Shown: positions 37,125 to 58,453 of the stretch, one piece after another
Numbering within the stretch: position 1 is the first letter of the stretch
Layout of the letters: every line of letters begins with the position of its first letter
IMG/VR virus record: IMGVR_UViG_3300025536_000010
Span: 1-64,000 of that record
DNA: 64,000 nt
Strand: one strand, 5' to 3'
The notes under the pieces: model-generated
Seen by the model: the letters and a program-made list of their open reading frames with translations, nothing else
Told to the model about the DNA's origin: nothing
The model's database searches: none
Made by a program: the position numbers and the translations under genes

Positions 37125-37360
37125 TGCCGGACGACACCACCTGGATTGTGAGCAAGGAACAAAAGGAAGAAGCCGACCGGAGGACTGCGGAGTTCAACGA
37201 CCTGACCAACGCGATCTTCGCGGACCTGGCGGACCAGGAGCGCAGTAAGAAAGCCGTAGAAGCCGTAAACGAGTACACGCGCTCCCTCGTACAGCAAGAA
37301 GATCCTGAGCGGGTAAGTGGTGTCGGCCGTGAGGTAGGCCAGCCAGGGCCTGACAAGTAG
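37124..37360 (+). CDS. Hypothetical protein
   Basis: TAATG coupling. Confidence 0.6.
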   Translation: MPDDTTWIVSKEQKEEADRRTAEFNDLTNAIFADLADQERSKKAVEAVNEYTRSLVQQEDPERVSGVGREVGQPGPDK

Positions 37361-37373
37361 CTGACACGTTCCA

Positions 37374-37625
37374 CGGTCGCCGGAGAGCATACGGAGACCG
37401 CGGGTGCCGCCAGACGAAAGTGCCTCACACTCGGCACCCGGGCAACGGGAGGGGCGGATAAACGCGGTTCCTGCGGTCTGGGCTCCTTCTGCCGTGCCGC
37501 ATCCAGAACCAACCCCGCTCCCGGACAGAGGACAGGAAGTCCGGTGAAGGGTCACGGAGGACGAGAGTCACCTACACCAAACCGGGTGAACCATGCACCC
37601 GGGGGCGGCTCAGAGCCTTGGTGCT
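37374..37625 (+). ncRNA. Candidate structured RNA rich in GGA motifs (CsrB/RsmZ-like sponge?)
   Basis: Nine GGA in 37382-37561; stems GGGTGCCG/CGGCACCC, CCGGAC/GTCCGG (loop AGAGGACAGGAA), GTC-ACGGAG-GAC, CCGGGTG/CACCCGG. Confidence 0.45.
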
Positions 37626-37626
37626 G

Positions 37627-37655
37627 TTGCCTAGCCCGCTTCAATACAGTATCGT
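37627..37655 (+). promoter_or_regulatory. Sigma70-like promoter upstream of groES
   Basis: TTGCCT-N17-TATCGT. Confidence 0.5.
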
Positions 37656-37678
37656 TCGCCCATGACGATCTACTTACC

Positions 37679-37710
37679 TTCGGTGAACCCGTACAACCGG
37701 GTTCACCGAA
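37679..37710. promoter_or_regulatory. Perfect 13-bp inverted repeat in groES leader
   Basis: TTCGGTGAACCCG-TACAAC-CGGGTTCACCGAA. Confidence 0.7.
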
Positions 37711-37739
37711 TTCATCCACACACCCTGGAGGCGATGCAC

Positions 37740-38141
37740 ATGGCGAAGACGGCTACGACCACGAAAAAGACCGAGGCCCCAACCAAGGCTCCCAAGAATG
37801 CCAAGGCCCTGGCCGAGGCCCTCAACAGCGAACACCCGCTGGCCCGCTGCCACCCGCGCGGCGACCGCGTGGTCATCCGCCGCGACCTGCCCAAGAAGCA
37901 GACCGAAGGCGGCATCCTGCTGCCGGACACAGTCGCCAACGCCAAACAGCAGACCGGCCTGGTCGTCCGCGTCGGCCCCGGCCCGCTAGTCAACGGCGCG
38001 CGTGTGCCGTTGGACTTGGAACCCGGCGACCGCGTCATCATCACCGGCTACGCCGGCCTGGAACTGCGTGACCAGAACACCCGCGAAGGCGACGAGTTCT
38101 GCATGCTCCGCGAAGAGGACGTGCTGGCCAAGCTGTCCTGA
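37740..38141 (+). CDS. groES: Co-chaperonin GroES with N-terminal extension
   Basis: HPRGDRVVI, TEGGILLPD, VVRVGPG, GDRVIITGYAG, LREEDVLAKL. Confidence 0.93.
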   Translation: MAKTATTTKKTEAPTKAPKNAKALAEALNSEHPLARCHPRGDRVVIRRDLPKKQTEGGILLPDTVANAKQQTGLVVRVGPGPLVNGARVPLDLEPGDRVIITGYAGLELRDQNTREGDEFCMLREEDVLAKLS

Positions 38142-52080: not shown

Positions 52081-53985
52081 ATGCGGGACGGTTTCTGGAG
52101 GAGGTTACTCATGCCCTGGCAATCGGAAGCGGACTTCGTCAAAACTGCTGGGCAGTCTGGCCACGCCGGGCTGCCCAACAAACACATCCACGTCGACACG
52201 GCCAAACAGCCCTCCGTCTCCGAACAGACGGAGGGTCAGCTGTACTCCGACATCGTCGCCAAGTTAATCGACGTCGAGCCGCGCATGTGCTGCCCTAACT
52301 GCGGCGCACGCGCACACGACATCAAAGACGGTGGCCAGGTTTACACCCGCGACATCTTGGAGTCGGGCGGGAAAACACACAAGGGCGACATCCCCAAGTG
52401 TCCGATCCCCGGCCTGGACATCCCGACGATGGCATACACGGTTAGTCCGTGCGGCTGCCGCGTAAGCGTGGAATGGGCCGGGGCGTTCGCGGCCGAACTC
52501 CAGAGCCGCCTGGGTGGCAGTAAACCGGCCCCCATCATCGGCGTCACGCCCAAACAGCGTGAGTTCAAACTGAACAAGCTGGAGGCGGACCTGGCGAGGC
52601 TCTACGCTCTCCAAGACAAAGCAACCGGCGCGCAGAAAGAGGCCGTCGACTACTGGATCGTGGTCGTCGCTGACCAGATCCAGCGGCTCTGTCCCGGCAA
52701 ACACAACCAGCAACCGTTGCCGAAGAAACTGGAGCCCGAAGTGATCCAGTGGGCCGTCAAAAACGCGCACAGTCAGCCGACCGCGCAGGTCACGACGACG
52801 CCCTACTACCCGTTGTTGGCAAGCCAGGGCGGTGCGCTACCGGCGGGTACGCCGCTTTACCAGAGCGCGAGCGGAGCCATGAGCACCGTACCTGTTTACA
52901 GCGGACAAAAACCAGCCGGACACTACGCAGTGCCCGGCCACCCGAACCCTACGGAGCAAACCGACGAGCATCCGAACTGGTCGGCTTGGGGTTACCCGCC
53001 AGGCTACAAGATGCCCAAGAACCTTGGGGTCGCCGCGCGCGTGGCGCAGGACAAGCTGGCAAACACCACGGCGAATCAGGCGGACGCACTGGCCCTGGCG
53101 ATACAGATGACGCAAGCTGGCATAATGAGTGCCACCAGCGTCGGCAAACTGGTCGGCGTCGACCTCGGCAAGGAGAAAACACAGTTCGTGAAGGGTAACG
53201 TCGGCAAAGTCCACAGCGTCAACGTCTACGTTATCCACGGTGAGTACGTCGTGCGGATCGAGACGGAGGCGTTCGAGCCCGTCGAGCGCAAGTTTGGCTC
53301 CCTGGCTGCGTGCATTGCCTACGCCAAACAGCTGAACGACAACCGACACACCAATCCTATCCTGGGTGCGGTGGCTGAGTTGCTATCGCGGCGTTTGAGC
53401 GAGATCCAAAACGCCCAGAAGGCGGCCAACCTGACGAACACGTCGGGTGTACCGCCGTTCAAGACGACCAAATTCACGCCGTCGCCGAACAAGGTCGTCC
53501 TGCACGGAGCCAACGCCGAAGAAACGTCGGTCTATGCGAAAGCAGCGTCGTCGCTGGACGAGATGCTCGGTGCGCTGGGCGTCCCGACCATCGTGCCGGG
53601 ACAGCCGGCGGCGACTCAATACACACCGGCCGACGTCAAGAAGATCCTGAGCTACTTCACCACGCACCAGGGCACCATCTACGGCGTCGTTAGTCAGTAC
53701 CTGCTACCGGCCGGCAGCGCTACGCCGACACTCACGTTGCTGGAGACGGTCGACGAGATCGCTAACAACTTGCGGCAGCACACCGAGAAAGGTATGTCCC
53801 TATCGGCGCTGTCCAAGCAGTTCCTTACGGCCTGGCGGCAGGCAATCGAGATCGGGAAGAAACTCCTCCCCGACGTCCAGGAGGTTGATGCGCCCGCGCC
53901 TACCACAACGCCGGCCCCGCAGCGGGTCGACGTCCGCGGGAAGCGGAAGCGGCGGACTATCCGCCAGATCGAGGATAACGAATGA
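52081..53985 (+). CDS. Large hypothetical protein with N-terminal Cys cluster
   Basis: RBS GGAGG; CCPNC..SPCGC. Confidence 0.7.
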   Translation: MRDGFWRRLLMPWQSEADFVKTAGQSGHAGLPNKHIHVDTAKQPSVSEQTEGQLYSDIVAKLIDVEPRMCCPNCGARAHDIKDGGQVYTRDILESGGKTHKGDIPKCPIPGLDIPTMAYTVSPCGCRVSVEWAGAFAAELQSRLGGSKPAPIIGVTPKQREFKLNKLEADLARLYALQDKATGAQKEAVDYWIVVVADQIQRLCPGKHNQQPLPKKLEPEVIQWAVKNAHSQPTAQVTTTPYYPLLASQGGALPAGTPLYQSASGAMSTVPVYSGQKPAGHYAVPGHPNPTEQTDEHPNWSAWGYPPGYKMPKNLGVAARVAQDKLANTTANQADALALAIQMTQAGIMSATSVGKLVGVDLGKEKTQFVKGNVGKVHSVNVYVIHGEYVVRIETEAFEPVERKFGSLAACIAYAKQLNDNRHTNPILGAVAELLSRRLSEIQNAQKAANLTNTSGVPPFKTTKFTPSPNKVVLHGANAEETSVYAKAASSLDEMLGALGVPTIVPGQPAATQYTPADVKKILSYFTTHQGTIYGVVSQYLLPAGSATPTLTLLETVDEIANNLRQHTEKGMSLSALSKQFLTAWRQAIEIGKKLLPDVQEVDAPAPTTTPAPQRVDVRGKRKRRTIRQIEDNE

Positions 53986-54854
53986 TCGAGAAACTCATTA
54001 TCGGAGCCCCGTTCGGGAACTATCTGCACTTCGCCTACACCACGCCGACCCTGGGCACTTACACCAGTTACTACCGGGGCGGCTTCTGGAAGCGCGTGTG
54101 GCGCGTGCTGACGACGGTGCGCTACTATCCAGGCATCCAAGCCTGGAAAAACAAACTGGGCCTGCCTAACCCCAGCATCCGGCGGCTGACCGAACTGTGT
54201 GGGCCGCCGGCGCACAGCCATATCAGGGCGACCACGCCGCCCAAGCTGATCGTCAAGGACAAGATCGTTTCGGTCACCGGACACAACGACGTACAGTGGG
54301 AGACAGTGATCGTCACGGCGGCTGACGCCAAACCAGCCATGATTGAGATGAACGTGGGCTGCCCCAACTGCCCAGGCGACGACGCTACGCAGGATTATCC
54401 CAAGGTGTTCGCCTGGGCGTCGGAATACTGTTTTCGCAAACAGGTGCCGCTCTGTCTCAAACTGCCGCCGGTCAGCTTCATGCGGATCGTCCGGCAGGCC
54501 GTCGACGGCGGCATTTGCCGCTTCCACTGCTGCAACACGTTACCCACGCCTGGCGGTGGGATGTCGGGCAAGCCGCTCAAGCCCCTGGCCCTCCAGGCGA
54601 GCGAGTATGTACGGAACTACTGCTACGCCCGCAGCTACGCCCTGGACATGCTGATTGGCGGCGGCGGGGTCACACACGCCCAGGACGCGCAGGACTTCCT
54701 CGGCGTGGGCTGTACCAACGTGGCCGTGGCCTCCGTTTTGTTCAACCCGCTCAACTGGCCGCGGGTCCGCCGGATCGCTCACGACCTCTACCTGCGAGAC
54801 GCCCCGCCGCCGCAACCGGCACCGGCGGTCAAGGACGTCGAGCAGCTGCTTTGA
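53982..54854 (+). CDS. pyrD: Dihydroorotate dehydrogenase (class 1-like)
   Basis: NKLGLPNP, EMNVGCPN (catalytic Cys loop), LKLPP, NTL, GGMSG, IGGGGV. Confidence 0.85.
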   Translation: MIEKLIIGAPFGNYLHFAYTTPTLGTYTSYYRGGFWKRVWRVLTTVRYYPGIQAWKNKLGLPNPSIRRLTELCGPPAHSHIRATTPPKLIVKDKIVSVTGHNDVQWETVIVTAADAKPAMIEMNVGCPNCPGDDATQDYPKVFAWASEYCFRKQVPLCLKLPPVSFMRIVRQAVDGGICRFHCCNTLPTPGGGMSGKPLKPLALQASEYVRNYCYARSYALDMLIGGGGVTHAQDAQDFLGVGCTNVAVASVLFNPLNWPRVRRIAHDLYLRDAPPPQPAPAVKDVEQLL

Positions 54855-54935: not shown

Positions 54936-55005
54936 CATCCTCCGGGGATGGAGGAGCACCGTCGAGGCCGGGCTGCACCAGGACGCAGCCCGGCTTCGTT
55001 CTTTT
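54936..55005 (+). promoter_or_regulatory. Leader/sRNA with two GGA-loop hairpins; the second is terminator-like
   Basis: TCCTCC-GGGGAT-GGAGGA; GAGGCCGGGCTGC-ACCAGGAC-GCAGCCCGGCTTC then GTTCTTTT. Confidence 0.55.
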
Positions 55006-55014
55006 GAGGGGGCC

Positions 55015-55284
55015 ATGCCGCCACTACGAAAACGGAAGTCGAAGATCACAGCCCCGGCAGTGGTCTACTTCACCCAGGCCAAGAACGAGGCGGGCAAGAA
55101 ACAGCTATGCTGCTTCGCTGAGTGCGTCTACGGCGGCACCCGCGTCGGCCCCATCTGGTCCCACACCTCTGCTTCTGTGCGCCGTGCCCTGGCCACGCTC
55201 ACACAGCGCTGCGACTGCGGGCGCAAGTTTCACAAGCACCGTTTCACAGAAGGTCGGCGCGTATTGCGCGACGACGGTTCGTGA
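55015..55284 (+). CDS. Basic Cys/His hypothetical protein
   Basis: RBS GAGGGG; CDCGRKFHKH. Confidence 0.65.
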   Translation: MPPLRKRKSKITAPAVVYFTQAKNEAGKKQLCCFAECVYGGTRVGPIWSHTSASVRRALATLTQRCDCGRKFHKHRFTEGRRVLRDDGS

Positions 55285-55290
55285 TCCGTA

Positions 55291-55320
55291 TAGACCCCCA
55301 GTTCGTAGCCCAGGTACAAT
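55291..55320 (+). promoter_or_regulatory. Sigma70-like promoter directly before structured RNA
   Basis: TAGACC-N18-TACAAT. Confidence 0.45.
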
Positions 55321-55326
55321 GCCGCT

Positions 55327-55549
55327 GTTGACTAACCGGGGCCTGCCGCTGGCGTCGGCCGGTAACGGACAGCAGCTGTTGGTCGCAAGATGTGACTGGC
55401 AGCTGGGAACGGCCCCGTGGCGAAAAGCCGGGGGCCAGGAGGAAATACCAGGCGGCACGCCACCTAGCCGCCCGGTGCCCAAACCCGCAACGGGAGAGGA
55501 TCGGTGCCCCGGCACAATGGGGAAGCTGGGGAGGCCGCGGTTAGTCGAC
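55327..55549 (+). ncRNA. Candidate multibranch structured ncRNA (about 223 nt)
   Basis: 17-nt closing stem 55327-43/55533-49; 14-bp hairpin 55373-86/55392-405 with several G-U pairs; GGCCCC/GGGGCC; GGCGGC/GCCGCC. Confidence 0.65.
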
Positions 55550-55574
55550 CCTTTCAACCACCACGGAGGGTGTC

Positions 55575-55898
55575 ATGCCTGCAATCCTCATCGACCGCTT
55601 CATTCGGCACCTGGGCTACGTCCCGAAATCTGAGATGGACGACGCCCTGGTCGGCCGAGACAAGATCGAGCGAGAACTGCGCCACAGCAAGCGCGACCTC
55701 CAAAACCAACTGTACCTGCGGGACCGACTGGAAAAAGAGGTCGGGTTCTTGCGCGAACTCGAACTGGCCAGGGTGCGCAACAACACGGCGACCCAGCAGG
55801 CCGTGGCGCGCTTGGACGCGGCGACGGACAAACTCGAAGAACTGATGGAGAATACCTGGCCGGCGGCGAACCTCGCCGCGCTTCCCGAACTCGGGTGA
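55575..55898 (+). CDS. Coiled-coil hypothetical protein
   Basis: RBS GGAGGG. Confidence 0.65.
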   Translation: MPAILIDRFIRHLGYVPKSEMDDALVGRDKIERELRHSKRDLQNQLYLRDRLEKEVGFLRELELARVRNNTATQQAVARLDAATDKLEELMENTWPAANLAALPELG

Positions 55899-55944
55899 TC
55901 GCCCGCGTCGAACGAACAACCATCGACGGCTCACGGAGGAGCGC

Positions 55945-56397
55945 ATGACGACCAAGAAAGGGGAGTCCCCTGAAAATCTGCTCATGATTGTCGGGCAACT
56001 GCTGGAGGCCACCAAAGCAGCATCGGACGGCTTGAAAAGTCTTAGCCTTGAAGTGCGCAACAACGCCAGCGCTATCATCAGCGCCGCAAAGACTTTGGAG
56101 TTTGTCGAAAAGACGATCAGCGAACTGAACGCCGTGGTGCGGGCTAACGCGGATTCGTTGGTGTCCCAAACGGCCGAGAACGCTGCGGCTATCGAGGACT
56201 TGCAGACGGGTAAAGCGGAACTCGACAAGGCGGTTGACGAGCTACAACAGATGGTCGACACCTTGGGCGTCGACCGCGTAAAAGCGGACCACTCCCGCGA
56301 CCTCGTCTGGAAGATCATCTACGGCGCCGCCTGGGCCATCACCACCGGCATTGCCGTCTACGCCGCCCTGGGACAGTGGGCGGCCATCAAGCCGTGA
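55945..56397 (+). CDS. Coiled-coil protein with C-terminal TM helix
   Basis: Heptad pattern followed by IIYGAAWAITTGIAVYAALG. Confidence 0.7.
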   Translation: MTTKKGESPENLLMIVGQLLEATKAASDGLKSLSLEVRNNASAIISAAKTLEFVEKTISELNAVVRANADSLVSQTAENAAAIEDLQTGKAELDKAVDELQQMVDTLGVDRVKADHSRDLVWKIIYGAAWAITTGIAVYAALGQWAAIKP

Positions 56398-56404
56398 GGT
56401 AATC

Positions 56405-56959
56405 ATGTCGATCCTGGCCACACACGATGGCCCTCCCCCGTGGGCGAGGGCCATGTTCACCTTGGGGCAAGAGAAAGCCGCGGCAGTCGCGGACCCGCCC
56501 CAGGTGTCTTACGACCTTGCCGGCCAGTTGTTCCTGGCGGCCAACGGTTGGCTGCTCCTGTCCGTGCCGAACGCTTTCGTTCACGGCCTCTATGCTACCA
56601 TCGACGAGCGCGGCGTAGAGTTACCGCCAGGCAAAGACGGCGGGCCGATGAACGCGCACATCAGTGTGATGAAACCGAAAGAGATTGAGCTACTCGGCGG
56701 GGCCGACAAGATCAGCGAGCGCGGCAAGCAGTTCCACTATACGATCAGCCGCCTGTACACAGTCGAGCCGTCAGGCTGGCCGGAGATGAGCAAAGTCTGG
56801 TTTGTGCGCGTTCACTCGCCAGAGTTGCAGGAGTTGCGGAGGAGTTACGGGTTGTCGTCCCTACCCAACGACGGGAAGCATGACTTCCATATTAGCGTCG
56901 CCGTCAGAAGGAGGGGCGTCTTGGGTAGGAACGACAACCGTAAAGGCGAGGCAGCTTAG
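56405..56959 (+). CDS. 2H phosphoesterase-family protein
   Basis: Two HxS motifs (AHISV, FHISV) about 76 aa apart. Confidence 0.7.
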   Translation: MSILATHDGPPPWARAMFTLGQEKAAAVADPPQVSYDLAGQLFLAANGWLLLSVPNAFVHGLYATIDERGVELPPGKDGGPMNAHISVMKPKEIELLGGADKISERGKQFHYTISRLYTVEPSGWPEMSKVWFVRVHSPELQELRRSYGLSSLPNDGKHDFHISVAVRRRGVLGRNDNRKGEAA

Positions 56960-57159
56960 GTTAGTTGTGCAGCAGGGGTGGTTGGCGCGGTTGGTTGGTT
57001 CGCCTGGAGCTTCGCCAGGACTTCCTCCCGGTGAACGGGCACCTTCCGGGGGGCTTCGATGCCGAGGCGGACTTTGCCGCCGTCGATGTCGACAACCGTG
57101 AGGGTGATGTCGTCTCCGATGACGATCTTTTCACCTAACTTGCGAGAGAGTACCAACAT
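56956..57159 (-). CDS. csrA: Carbon storage regulator CsrA/RsmA
   Basis: MLVLSRKLGEKIVIGDDITLTVVDIDGGKVRLGIEAPRKVPVHREE; RBS AAAGGAG on minus strand. Confidence 0.96.
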   Translation of the reverse strand: MLVLSRKLGEKIVIGDDITLTVVDIDGGKVRLGIEAPRKVPVHREEVLAKLQANQPTAPTTPAAQLT

Positions 57160-57259: not shown

Positions 57260-58453
57260 ATGCTAGACTTCGCTGTCCCCACCCTGACCCGCTACGACAC
57301 CATCGTCGCAGCGCTAGCCGGGCTTGAGAAGCTGGCGCTCACCGCCTCACAGCTTACCCGCGAAGCCGCCAAAGTCGACCCCAATCCGACTGACGCCCAG
57401 AAGGAGAGCGGCAACTACCGCAAAGGCCACGTCGCCTGGAAGGGTCTGAACATCACTATCGAGACGGCGGCTGGTCAGGTCCGCCGCGGGGTGGGCAAGG
57501 ATGGCAAGCCGTGGCAGACCAAGATGAGGGACCACTATGGCTATGTTAAAGGTACTGTCTCCGACGCAGACGGAGATCATGTCGACGTGTTCATTAGTTG
57601 CGACCAGCAGCCCGATACCAGGGGGCCGCAGCGAGCCCAACCGGGGTGGGGATGGCTTCGCTCGGAACTCGTCCACGTTATCAACCAGGTCGACCCCGAT
57701 ACCGGCAAGTTCGACGAGCACAAGGTTGTGCTGGGCTGCCTGGATGAAGAGTCTGCGCGCCAATCTTACCTGCGCAACTATGAACCGGGGTGGCAAGGAC
57801 TTGGGTCGGTCACTGCCCTCACCCTGCCGCAGTTCAAATGGTGGCTCGACCGCGCCGACACGTCTAAGGAAATCAAAGAAGGGTTTTTTGCAGCACCGGC
57901 GAATCGTAAGAAATCAGCGACCGACCTGATCCAAAAAACGGCTTTTGACGCCACTGCCACACACATCCTGGTCGTCAAGCGCGCCGAGGACCGCGAAACG
58001 CCTTTCACCGTCGCTGTTGATCTGGACGGCACCCTGGCCGAAAAAGAGGAACCGTTCGACCCAACCTCTATCGGTACGCCGCGCCAGAAAGCCATTGACT
58101 ACGTTCGTCTCTTCCGCGAAGCGGGGGCACGGATTATCATCTTCACGGTTCGCGGCGACAAAGAGTTGGTGGAGGCGTGGCTGGAGGAACACGACGTTCC
58201 CTACGATTACGTCAACGAGAACCCGGACCAGCCCGAAGACGCTTCGGGTAAGGTCATCGCCGACGCTTACTGGGACGACAAGGCGTTCAACGCCGAAGAC
58301 CCGGATGAGTTCGGACCCACGATCCTGCGGAAGGTCATGGGAGGCAAGGACGAGGCGCACGCTGCGCCTGCGCTCCACATCACAGTGGTCAAGAACACGA
58401 CGTTCGTGTTCTCGGCCCCGGAGTTACTGGATGCCATGAAGGAGGCCGCATGA
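57260..58453 (+). CDS. Phage inorganic-pyrophosphatase-like (InPase) domain fused to HAD phosphatase
   Basis: PTDAQKESGNYRKGH..HYGY..DGDHVDVF..FDEHKVVLG; then VDLDGTLA, IFTVR, KVIADAYWDDKA. Confidence 0.8.
   Translation: MLDFAVPTLTRYDTIVAALAGLEKLALTASQLTREAAKVDPNPTDAQKESGNYRKGHVAWKGLNITIETAAGQVRRGVGKDGKPWQTKMRDHYGYVKGTVSDADGDHVDVFISCDQQPDTRGPQRAQPGWGWLRSELVHVINQVDPDTGKFDEHKVVLGCLDEESARQSYLRNYEPGWQGLGSVTALTLPQFKWWLDRADTSKEIKEGFFAAPANRKKSATDLIQKTAFDATATHILVVKRAEDRETPFTVAVDLDGTLAEKEEPFDPTSIGTPRQKAIDYVRLFREAGARIIIFTVRGDKELVEAWLEEHDVPYDYVNENPDQPEDASGKVIADAYWDDKAFNAEDPDEFGPTILRKVMGGKDEAHAAPALHITVVKNTTFVFSAPELLDAMKEAA
57931..57949 (-). repeat. Dispersed motif copy inside CDS (reverse orientation)
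   Basis: Reverse complement GTCAAAAGCCGTTTTTTGG. Confidence 0.6.

What the first reader, a model, noticed from the sequence alone, without database searches (positions are those of the whole stretch)
55291..55556. Self-contained 223-nt multibranch RNA with its own promoter
Seen: begins 6 nt after TACAAT and is closed by a 17-nt end-to-end helix, followed by CCTTTC. It has at least four internal hairpins and eight GGA. One 14-bp hairpin has four G-U pairs that only work on the + strand, which is evidence of RNA-level selection. It shares GCAACGGGAG with the 37374 element. It does not fit tRNA, tmRNA, RNase P or SRP by eye. Inference: a previously undescribed phage ncRNA.
Basis: partly seen in the sequence, partly recalled or inferred. 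Interest (0 to 1): 0.7.

Follow-up and report, generated by a model that had tools for sequence, protein, structure and literature searches.

The report
New structured RNA of jumbo phages
A real, conserved folded RNA of about 220 bases, matching no known RNA family, heads an RNA-end-healing operon beside a phage CsrA gene in a clade of giant phages; it is probably a protein-binding regulatory RNA, but its function is untested.

Summary
Window 55327-55549 (+) folds into a seven-helix RNA (P1-P7) closed by a 17-bp end-to-end helix, 6 nt after TACAAT. It is a single-copy element of a 235-kb IMG/VR phage. I found 12 further homologues (198-223 nt, 47-77% GC). All have a -10-like hexamer 5-12 nt upstream and the same seven helices. 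Covariation is strong: 23 of 35 modelled pairs change on both sides and 95.9% of cells pair, against 77.6% in shuffles (0/500). Rfam and ARAGORN give nothing.

No U-tract terminator follows P1, so it is probably the 5' leader of its operon, not a terminated sRNA. That operon always contains a 2H-SAK phosphoesterase and a HAD phosphatase. A small Zn-type protein (p89) usually lies upstream. A convergent csrA follows 2H-SAK in all evaluable lineages but one.

The P3 apical loop is a canonical CsrA site, A(N)GGA(U), in 12 of 13 copies, but not in the window copy. Other GGA motifs sit in junctions and in the P7 loop.

My best reading (about 0.4) is a CsrA-responsive regulatory RNA. Riboswitch and p89-partner readings remain open. 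The 10-mer shared with the 37374 element is chance.

The parts
55015..55284 (+). p89: small basic protein with invariant C37, H50, C66, C68, H73. It lies immediately upstream of the RNA in 10 of 13 homologous loci.
   Evidence: The family has only 35 clusters and no Pfam match. AF2 pLDDT is 92.
55291..55320 (+). Promoter-like site: TAGACC (-35-like), 18-nt spacer, TACAAT (-10).
   Evidence: A TAnnnT hexamer (GATAAT in L198) lies 5-12 nt upstream of P1 in all 13 homologues. The -35 is not conserved.
55327..55549 (+). The structured RNA, 223 nt, helices P1-P7.
55327..55344 (+). P1 5' strand (12 bp + G + 5 bp). It pairs with 55532-55549.
   Evidence: P1 is 8-22 bp in all 12 full-length homologues, with only 46% mean strand identity. 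All 5 modelled inner pairs change on both sides.
55345..55363 (+). P2, nearly invariant: GCCGCUGGCGUCGGCCGGU.
   Evidence: Two pairs show G-C / A-U / G-U and C-G / U-A / U-G variants.
55373..55405 (+). P3: 14-bp hairpin with four G-U pairs and apical loop AAGAU (55387-55391). The loop is A(N)GGA(U) in the 12 other homologues.
55411..55436 (+). P4: hairpin with conserved loop UGGCGAAAAGCC and an invariant U-G pair.
   Evidence: 6 of 10 pairs change on both sides; the U-G pair is present in 13/13.
55437..55447 (+). J4/5: single-stranded AGGAGGAAAUA with two GGA.
   Evidence: GGAGG or GGA is present here in most homologues.
55448..55475 (+). P5: hairpin with conserved loop ACGCC (55457-55461).
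   Evidence: 5 of 7 pairs change on both sides.
55484..55494 (+). P6: short variable hairpin that holds the 10-mer shared with 37442. GGAGAGGAU follows it.
55507..55531 (+). P7: 7-bp hairpin with loop ACAAUGGGGAA. GGGGAA is present in 11 of 12.
   Evidence: 5 of 6 pairs change on both sides.
55550..55555 (+). CCUUUC tail. This is not a U-tract terminator.
   Evidence: Pairing with the P4 loop was tested and not supported.
55559..55577 (+). Ribosome-binding site of the 107-aa ORF, held in a hexaloop hairpin (CACC / ACGGAG / GGUG), then ATG at 55575.
55575..56397 (+). Variable small ORFs p107 (55575-55898) and p150 (55945-56397). p150 has a second ribosome-binding-site hairpin at 55929-55942.
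56405..56959 (+). 2H-SAK phosphoesterase. It lies downstream on the same strand in every evaluable homologous locus.
56956..57159 (-). csrA, convergent with 2H-SAK and overlapping its end by 4 nt.
   Evidence: PF02599 E 7e-26. It aligns to RsmE (2JPP) with L4, R6 and R44 kept.
57260..58453 (+). InPase plus HAD (PNKP-like) phosphatase protein.

Best explanation
SHOWN: 55327-55549 (+) encodes a member of a previously uncatalogued family of structured RNAs of about 200-223 nt. The fold is seven helices around a junction closed by a long 5'/3' helix. The family is found in a clade of jumbo phages. A conserved -10 box lies just upstream. No terminator follows, so the RNA is made as the 5' end of an operon that always contains a 2H-SAK phosphoesterase. 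Next to that gene there is always a HAD phosphatase gene, or the HAD is fused to 2H-SAK. INFERRED mechanism: it is a protein-binding regulatory RNA whose main effector is CsrA, either the phage's own (56956-57159) or the host's. CsrA dimers would bind the A(N)GGA(U) loop at the tip of P3 and the unpaired GGA motifs in J4/5, J6/7 and the P7 loop. The RNA would then either titrate CsrA away from the many phage mRNAs whose ribosome-binding site sits in an A(N)GGAG hexaloop, or bridge to the hairpin of the first downstream ORF and set translation of the operon. The invariant core (P2, P4 loop, P5 loop) implies a defined 3D fold with a second, unknown partner. The window copy has lost the P3 GGA, so here CsrA binding would rest on the other motifs. 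The confidence given is for the inferred CsrA mechanism; that this is a real conserved structured RNA I hold at above 0.95.
For: Reality of the RNA:
- 13 homologues in syntenic position.
- A sequence-only alignment gives 40 pairs, 20 of them compensatory, against 8.7 +/- 2 in shuffles.
- A CM-based alignment gives 95.9% paired cells against 77.6%, 23/35 pairs changed on both sides, and covariation 0.59 against 0.23 (0/500); slid controls give 0.10-0.18.
- P1, P3 and P6 form in every homologue despite 46-53% identity.
- The + strand MFE is lower than the - strand MFE in 9/9.
- No Rfam, tRNA or tmRNA match.

Leader status: there is no U-tract after P1, and the next ATG lies 22-70 nt on.

CsrA link:
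- csrA lies within about 1.5 kb in the window, L097, L098, L099, L106, L133, L137, L198 and L200.
- Its RNA-binding residues are kept.
- The P3 loop is UAGGAU, CAGGAU, AAGGAU, ACGGAC, AUGGAA or AGGGAU in 12 of 13, above a covarying stem. From my own knowledge, not checked in a paper here, this is the SELEX and RsmE-hcnA type of site.
- 19 of 187 candidate ribosome-binding sites in this genome sit in exact hexaloop hairpins, against 2-5 in slid controls. Two of them are directly downstream of the RNA. A csrA+ relative has 18 of 137.
Against: - The window copy lacks the P3 GGA (AAGAU); an independent assembly shows the same.
- One lineage (L100/L101, 180-kb records, 82-84% complete) keeps the RNA and its P3 loop but has no csrA anywhere. 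There 2H-SAK is fused to the HAD domain.
- That csrA-less phage still has 9 of 137 ribosome-binding-site hairpins.
- Only two of six hairpin loops carry GGA.
- The near-invariant P2, P4 and P5 sequences are not what a CsrA decoy needs.
- Eight other csrA-bearing viral contigs have no such RNA.
- The GGA count is not a genome outlier.
- There are no transcript data.
- The csrA linkage may be one inherited arrangement and not repeated selection.
Confidence: 0.4

Rival explanations
1. Riboswitch-like sensor. The junction closed by P1 binds a small molecule, plausibly a nucleotide-derived one such as a 2',3'-cyclic nucleotide or a cyclic immune signal. Binding would control expression of the downstream 2H-SAK / HAD (InPase, NUDIX) enzymes that would degrade it.
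For: - A multi-helix junction closed by P1 lies directly after the promoter and 22-70 nt before an ORF.
- Near-invariant nucleotides are concentrated in loops and junction strands.
- The only universal genomic partners are 2H-SAK and the HAD phosphatase, both nucleotide or RNA-end phosphoesterases.
- The RNA persists without csrA and without p89.
- 2H and InPase domains have been proposed to act on conflict-related nucleotides (PMC5512222).
Against: - I found no expression platform. There is no alternative terminator or anti-terminator, and the downstream ribosome-binding-site hairpin is independent of P1.
- The first downstream gene varies.
- No known riboswitch class matches.
- This reading does not explain the canonical CsrA-type P3 loop.
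Confidence: 0.2
2. Partner RNA of p89. The small basic Zn-type protein encoded just upstream binds the folded core. This would form an RNP, or act on the leader as a translational activator or antiterminator. The analogy is to Mu Com-mom or lambda N-nut, recalled from my own knowledge.
For: - p89 abuts the RNA promoter in 10 of 13 loci.
- It is unusually conserved (53-82% identity) and restricted to this clade, with 35 clusters.
- It has an Arg/Lys-rich N-terminus and invariant Cys/His.
- Its confident model has a beta-beta-beta-alpha-beta core that weakly resembles RNase-H-like nucleic-acid-binding folds.
Against: - The RNA occurs without an adjacent p89 in L099, and no p89 is found in the genome bin (MAG) holding L137.
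- The fold matches are weak (E about 0.2, TM 0.35-0.6).
- There is no direct evidence of RNA binding.
Confidence: 0.18
3. RNA-repair-linked RNA: a substrate, decoy or scaffold (Y-RNA-like or tRNA-like) for the 2H-SAK / HAD end-healing enzymes.
For: The RNA is universally linked to a cyclic-phosphodiesterase plus phosphatase pair, which is described as an RNA end-healing set in jumbo phages (PMC7824862). The long closing stem formed by the 5' and 3' ends resembles that of Y RNAs (my own knowledge).
Against: - The genome has no Ro60/TROVE and no RtcB.
- There is no tRNA-like module by ARAGORN or Rfam.
- I did not search for an RNA ligase.
Confidence: 0.08
4. Not a functional RNA: a chance GC-rich fold, a DNA-level site or a missed small ORF.
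For: High-GC DNA folds well by chance, and the - strand also gives negative z-scores. One gene caller placed a 155-aa ORF on the opposite strand in L096.
Against: - Compensatory changes occur in five modelled helices.
- The seven-helix architecture is conserved from 47% to 77% GC.
- An invariant U-G pair and the lower + strand energies point to RNA on the + strand.
- Length differences are not multiples of three.
- Gene callers left the gap uncalled in the other data sets.
Confidence: 0.02

Closest known systems
CsrB / RsmY / RsmZ-type CsrA-sequestering sRNAs
   Same: Several GGA motifs in a hairpin loop and in single-stranded linkers. One loop matches the high-affinity A(N)GGA(U) site. A csrA gene is present in the same genome, and there are many candidate CsrA-type ribosome-binding-site hairpins.
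   Different: No sequence or CM similarity. Only 2 of 6 loops carry GGA. The core is highly conserved and complex. No terminator follows. It is phage-borne. It persists in a csrA-less lineage, and the window copy lacks the best site.
CsrA-regulated mRNA leaders (glgC, hcnA type)
   Same: It is promoter-proximal. An upstream GGA hairpin is combined with a GGA-containing hairpin at the ribosome-binding site of the first ORF, which is the geometry used for dual-site bridging by a CsrA dimer.
   Different: Known leaders are short and simple. Here about 200 nt of conserved seven-helix structure lies between the promoter and the ribosome-binding site.
Large junction-type riboswitch aptamers (e.g. 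FMN, cobalamin, lysine)
   Same: A P1-closed multi-helix junction with invariant loop and junction nucleotides, in 5' UTR position, upstream of enzymes.
   Different: No match to any Rfam class, no recognisable expression platform, and an unknown ligand.
Bacterial Y RNAs (YrlA) in rsr-rtcB RNA-repair operons
   Same: A stable RNA closed by a 5'/3' stem and encoded next to RNA-repair-type enzymes.
   Different: No Ro60/TROVE, no RtcB and no tRNA-like module. This RNA is twice the size.
Catalogue of candidate structured RNAs from IMG/VR (PMC10690425)
   Same: The source is the same kind (IMG/VR intergenic regions with covariation).
   Different: The catalogued motifs are 29-151 nt, shorter than this RNA. 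I could not check whether a sub-part is listed.

Membership tests
Csr/Rsm decoy sRNA (CsrB, CsrC, RsmX/Y/Z) | Match to the family covariance models | tested here: not met
   Rfam 15 gives no hit at gathering score in 64 kb. An E-value search of 55100-55750 gives only mir-138 and M23 at E>1.
Csr/Rsm decoy sRNA (CsrB, CsrC, RsmX/Y/Z) | Many GGA motifs, most of them in the loops of successive hairpins | tested here: inconclusive
   There are 4-10 GGA per homologue, of which 3-9 are unpaired. Only the P3 and P7 loops carry them; the P4, P5 and P6 loops do not. The window copy has none in P3.
Csr/Rsm decoy sRNA (CsrB, CsrC, RsmX/Y/Z) | Independent transcript with its own promoter and terminator | tested here: not met
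   The -10 box is conserved, but no U-tract terminator follows P1.
Csr/Rsm decoy sRNA (CsrB, CsrC, RsmX/Y/Z) | Binds and antagonises CsrA | not testable with these tools
   This needs a gel shift or a reporter assay.
Csr/Rsm decoy sRNA (CsrB, CsrC, RsmX/Y/Z) | A cognate CsrA is present | tested here: met
   PF02599 E 7e-26 at 56956-57159. It is absent in the L100/L101 lineage.
Riboswitch | Conserved aptamer in a 5' UTR with covariation-supported helices | tested here: met
Riboswitch | Expression platform with mutually exclusive structures | tested here: inconclusive
   None was recognised. The P4-loop / tail pairing is not better than shuffles.
Riboswitch | Specific ligand binding | not testable with these tools
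   This needs in-line probing or ITC.
Y RNA | Ro60 (TROVE) partner in the genome and a tRNA-like module | tested here: not met
   PF05731 and PF01139 are absent from the 235-kb genome. ARAGORN finds nothing.
tRNA, tmRNA, RNase P, SRP, 6S, known ribozymes | Covariance-model or ARAGORN match | tested here: not met
Paralogue of the 37374 element | Alignable sequence or structure beyond the shared 10-mer | tested here: not met
   A profile nhmmer search finds one copy in the genome. The 10-mer lies in the variable P6.

The most novel reading that the evidence does not exclude
A clade of jumbo phages carries its own post-transcriptional control circuit built around this RNA. The folded core senses a signal, either a nucleotide-type molecule produced during infection or defence, or the Zn-type protein p89. 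The P3 arm and the junction GGA motifs capture CsrA. The RNA thereby couples that signal to translation of an RNA-end-healing or nucleotide-degrading counter-defence operon (2H-SAK + HAD/InPase/NUDIX) and to some 20 phage genes whose ribosome-binding sites sit in CsrA-type hairpins. This would be a new RNA class combining sensor and CsrA-decoy functions in a virus.
Probability: 0.15. Interest if true: 0.85.

Novelty: new variant of a known kind. Interest (0 to 1): 0.68.

Why it matters
Complex RNAs with seven helices, an invariant core and strong covariation are rare finds, and they have usually turned out to be riboswitches, ribozymes or RNP scaffolds. This one is phage-specific. It is tied to an RNA-end-healing enzyme pair and, in most lineages, to a phage csrA. 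csrA genes are known in about 1% of phage genomes with no assigned role and no reported partner RNA (PMC7366521). If the RNA binds CsrA, it gives the first testable model of what phage CsrA does. If it binds a small molecule or p89, it is a new sensor or RNP class controlling likely counter-defence enzymes. In either case there is now an alignment of 13 sequences and a covariance model on which to design experiments.

Tried and rejected
1. blastn of the region against 50,697 GenBank phages gave no match.
2. The 107-aa downstream ORF is an orphan, with only itself in 5.8 billion proteins.
3. Locus L002 was a spurious match.
4. Eight other csrA-bearing viral contigs (L004-L011) have no RNA homologue by blastn, nhmmer or CM.
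5. Homologues of the neighbouring dihydroorotate-dehydrogenase-like gene (DHO_dh, 53982-54854) that lack the 2H-SAK module have no RNA.
6. A gapped pattern scan of genome contigs gave 83 hits. Only L133 and L137 are true.
I therefore showed these helices by folding each homologue separately.
8. A pseudoknot between the P4 loop and the CUUUC tail is not better than shuffled tails, -6.8 against -6.0 kcal/mol.
9. The Y-RNA idea fails: no TROVE and no RtcB.
10. Fold searches for p89 gave only weak RNase-H-like or integrase-core matches.
11. No RNA-seq run was listed. One DNA run, probably the source sample, holds the locus.
12. My own error: I translated p89 from 55016, which is the wrong frame. 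The correct ORF is 55015-55284, redone. The wrong-frame 'hits' only reflected nucleotide conservation.
13. I did not run complex prediction. With RNA it gives no verdict, and any GGA hairpin would be expected to dock on CsrA.
14. mafft-xinsi and mafft-qinsi are not installed.

Full report
**1. What is at the coordinates.**
The window is the first 64 kb of a 234,886-bp IMG/VR virus record (62% GC, CheckV 100%) from a subsurface metagenome. The finding lies in a 290-nt gap between two + strand ORFs, p89 (55015-55284) and a 107-aa ORF (55575-55898).
- TACAAT is at 55315-55320.
- A 12-bp helix (55327-55338 / 55538-55549) is extended, across a G/G mismatch, by 5 more pairs. That gives a 223-nt RNA followed by CCTTTC.
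- There are six internal hairpins and eight GGA.
- There is a 14-bp hairpin with four G-U pairs.

The + strand folds significantly better than shuffles and the - strand does not. Rfam 15 and ARAGORN find nothing.

**2. It is conserved and covaries.**
The 107-aa ORF is an orphan. The neighbouring DHO_dh-like gene, however, has hundreds of relatives, many on contigs over 200 kb. I used those relatives, DNA patterns from the conserved core, and later p89 to find homologues. This gave 12 further copies of the RNA: L097, L096, L098, L099, L106 (=L107), L101 (=L100), L133, L137, L198, L199, L200 (=L201), and L016, which is cut by its contig end.

The copies are 198-223 nt long and range from 47 to 77% GC. 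There is a single copy per genome. Every copy has a TAnnnT hexamer (GATAAT in L198) 5-12 nt before P1.

Covariation was tested two ways:
- On a sequence-only MAFFT alignment, RNAalifold predicts 40 pairs, 20 with compensatory changes. My column shuffles give 8.7 +/- 2.0, with 0 of 500 reaching 20.
- On the alignment made with covariance model R1, 95.9% of cells pair against 77.6% in shuffles. 23 of 35 pairs change on both sides. The covariation score is 0.59, against 0.23 in shuffles (0/500) and 0.10-0.18 for slid partners. This alignment is fitted to the model, so it leans towards the structure.

P1 (8-22 bp), P3 (11-16 bp) and P6 vary too much in length for column-wise counting. They nonetheless form in every homologue folded on its own, at 46-53% strand identity. 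The common seven-helix architecture costs at most 4.5 kcal/mol relative to each MFE. An invariant U-G pair in P4 and lower + strand energies in 9/9 homologues point to RNA on the + strand. The element is therefore a real structured RNA family.

**3. Leader or free sRNA.**
The terminator scan finds a canonical hairpin-plus-U-tract at 54963-54998 but nothing after P1. Across homologues the tail is CUUUC-like in about half and has no U run in L133, L106 and L200. The next start codon follows 22-70 nt later on the same strand. In L200 that ORF is 2H-SAK itself. Some loci have a terminator-like hairpin between p89 and the -10 box, which fits a new transcript starting at the RNA. I conclude that the RNA is the promoter-proximal part of an operon transcript. 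Release by processing is possible but untested, and no RNA-seq run could be listed.

**4. Genomic partners.**
- Downstream on the same strand there is always a 2H-SAK phosphoesterase (PF22547), after 0-3 variable small ORFs.
- Next to 2H-SAK there is always a protein with a PNKP-like HAD phosphatase half, variously joined to InPase, NUDIX, GNAT or SNF2 domains.
- In L101 the 2H-SAK and HAD parts are fused in one frame.
- A csrA gene (PF02599, E 7e-26) lies convergent between the two in every evaluable lineage except L100/L101. Its residues L4, R6 and R44 align with RsmE. The whole 177-183-kb records of L100/L101 lack csrA.
- p89 is a clade-specific basic protein with invariant Cys/His. It abuts the RNA in 10 of 13 loci but is missing next to L099, and no p89 is found in the genome bin (MAG) that holds L137.
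- The genome has no Ro60 and no RtcB.

**5. CsrA signature.**
The apical loop of P3 sits on a covarying stem. It reads UAGGAU, CAGGAU, AAGGAU, ACGGAC, AUGGAA or AGGGAU in 12 of 13 homologues. From my own knowledge, this is the A(N)GGA(U)-in-loop shape of high-affinity CsrA/RsmE sites. The window copy alone reads AAGAU, and an independent assembly shows the same.

Further GGA motifs recur in J4/5 (GGAGG), in J6/7, in the P7 loop (GGGGAA, 11 of 12) and at the 3' side of P7.

Genome-wide, 19 of 187 A(N)GGAN sites that precede an ATG are closed by at least 4 bp into an exact hexaloop, against 2-5 for slid controls. Two of these sit just downstream of the RNA. A csrA+ relative has 18 of 137 and the csrA-less relative has 9 of 137. 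These phages thus carry many CsrA-type ribosome-binding-site hairpins. The csrA-less phage shows only about half the excess, not none.

**6. Weighing.**
The CsrA reading explains the P3 loop, the junction GGAs, the csrA neighbour and the ribosome-binding-site hairpins. It does not explain the near-invariant P2, P4 and P5 sequences, the survival of the RNA without csrA, or the loss of the P3 GGA in the window copy. Also, eight other csrA-bearing viral contigs lack the RNA.

The invariant core and the universal link to 2H-SAK + HAD favour a sensor-type leader (riboswitch-like) or a p89-binding RNA. For those readings I found no expression platform and no obligatory p89.

I therefore commit to 'CsrA-responsive regulatory RNA at the head of the 2H-SAK operon' at about 0.4. 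The alternatives are riboswitch-like sensor (0.2), p89 partner (0.18) and repair-linked RNA (0.08). A non-functional element is essentially excluded (0.02).

**7. Comparison and novelty.**
The RNA is not a member of any Rfam family. It fails the CM, terminator and loop-pattern criteria for Csr/Rsm decoys. It may still work like a CsrA-binding RNA. csrA alleles were reported in about 1.2% of phage genomes without a known role or partner RNA (PMC7366521). The published IMG/VR catalogue of candidate structured RNAs holds motifs of at most 151 nt (PMC10690425). The 10-mer shared with the 37374 element is a chance match in the variable P6.

Noticed in passing
window 3137, 9042, 22843, 40085, 51299, 55563, 55933 (loop starts); 19 sites in the whole genome: Ribosome-binding sites embedded in exact A(N)GGAG hexaloops closed by 4-8 bp, 2-7 nt before ATG. 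They are about 5-fold enriched over slid controls. The excess is also seen in a csrA+ relative (18/137) and is weaker in a csrA-less relative (9/137).
   Followed up: partly
window 56956-57159 (-): Phage csrA with intact RNA-binding residues. It is convergent with 2H-SAK and overlaps its end by 4 nt, so read-through from the RNA promoter would be antisense to csrA.
   Followed up: partly
window 55015-55284: p89 is a clade-restricted (35 clusters), highly conserved basic protein with invariant C37, H50, C66, C68, H73. Its confident beta-beta-beta-alpha-beta model has no Pfam family and only weak RNase-H-like fold matches.
   Followed up: partly
L101 1408-2540 (-), also L100: In this lineage 2H-SAK is fused in frame to the PNKP-like HAD domain, and csrA is absent from the whole record. 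This suggests that 2H-SAK and the HAD phosphatase act together as an end-healing pair.
   Followed up: partly
window 37360-37740: A second long GGA-rich intergenic region ends in a 13-bp hairpin (about 37683-37712). Its fold z-scores are similar on both strands (-2.3 / -2.0). It is not homologous to the RNA studied here.
   Followed up: partly
window 54963-54998: Canonical intrinsic terminator (14-bp stem, then TTCTTTTG) between the DHO_dh-like gene and p89.
   Followed up: no
window 53982-54854: A divergent dihydroorotate-dehydrogenase-like gene has about 390 relatives, many on contigs over 200 kb. Some are binned with Planctomycetota or Phycisphaerales MAGs, which may hint at hosts of the wider clade.
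   Followed up: no
L133 (Nannocystaceae MAG contig) and L137 (Ca. Nanopelagicales MAG contig): The only csrA found in each of these genome bins lies on the phage-like contig that carries the RNA. The phage may therefore bring CsrA into hosts that lack it, if the binning is right.
   Followed up: no
L200 3714-4000: Two copies of a CCCCACAyCTGTGGGGGTGA hairpin lie in the gap upstream of p89, after a second 87-aa ORF.
   Followed up: no
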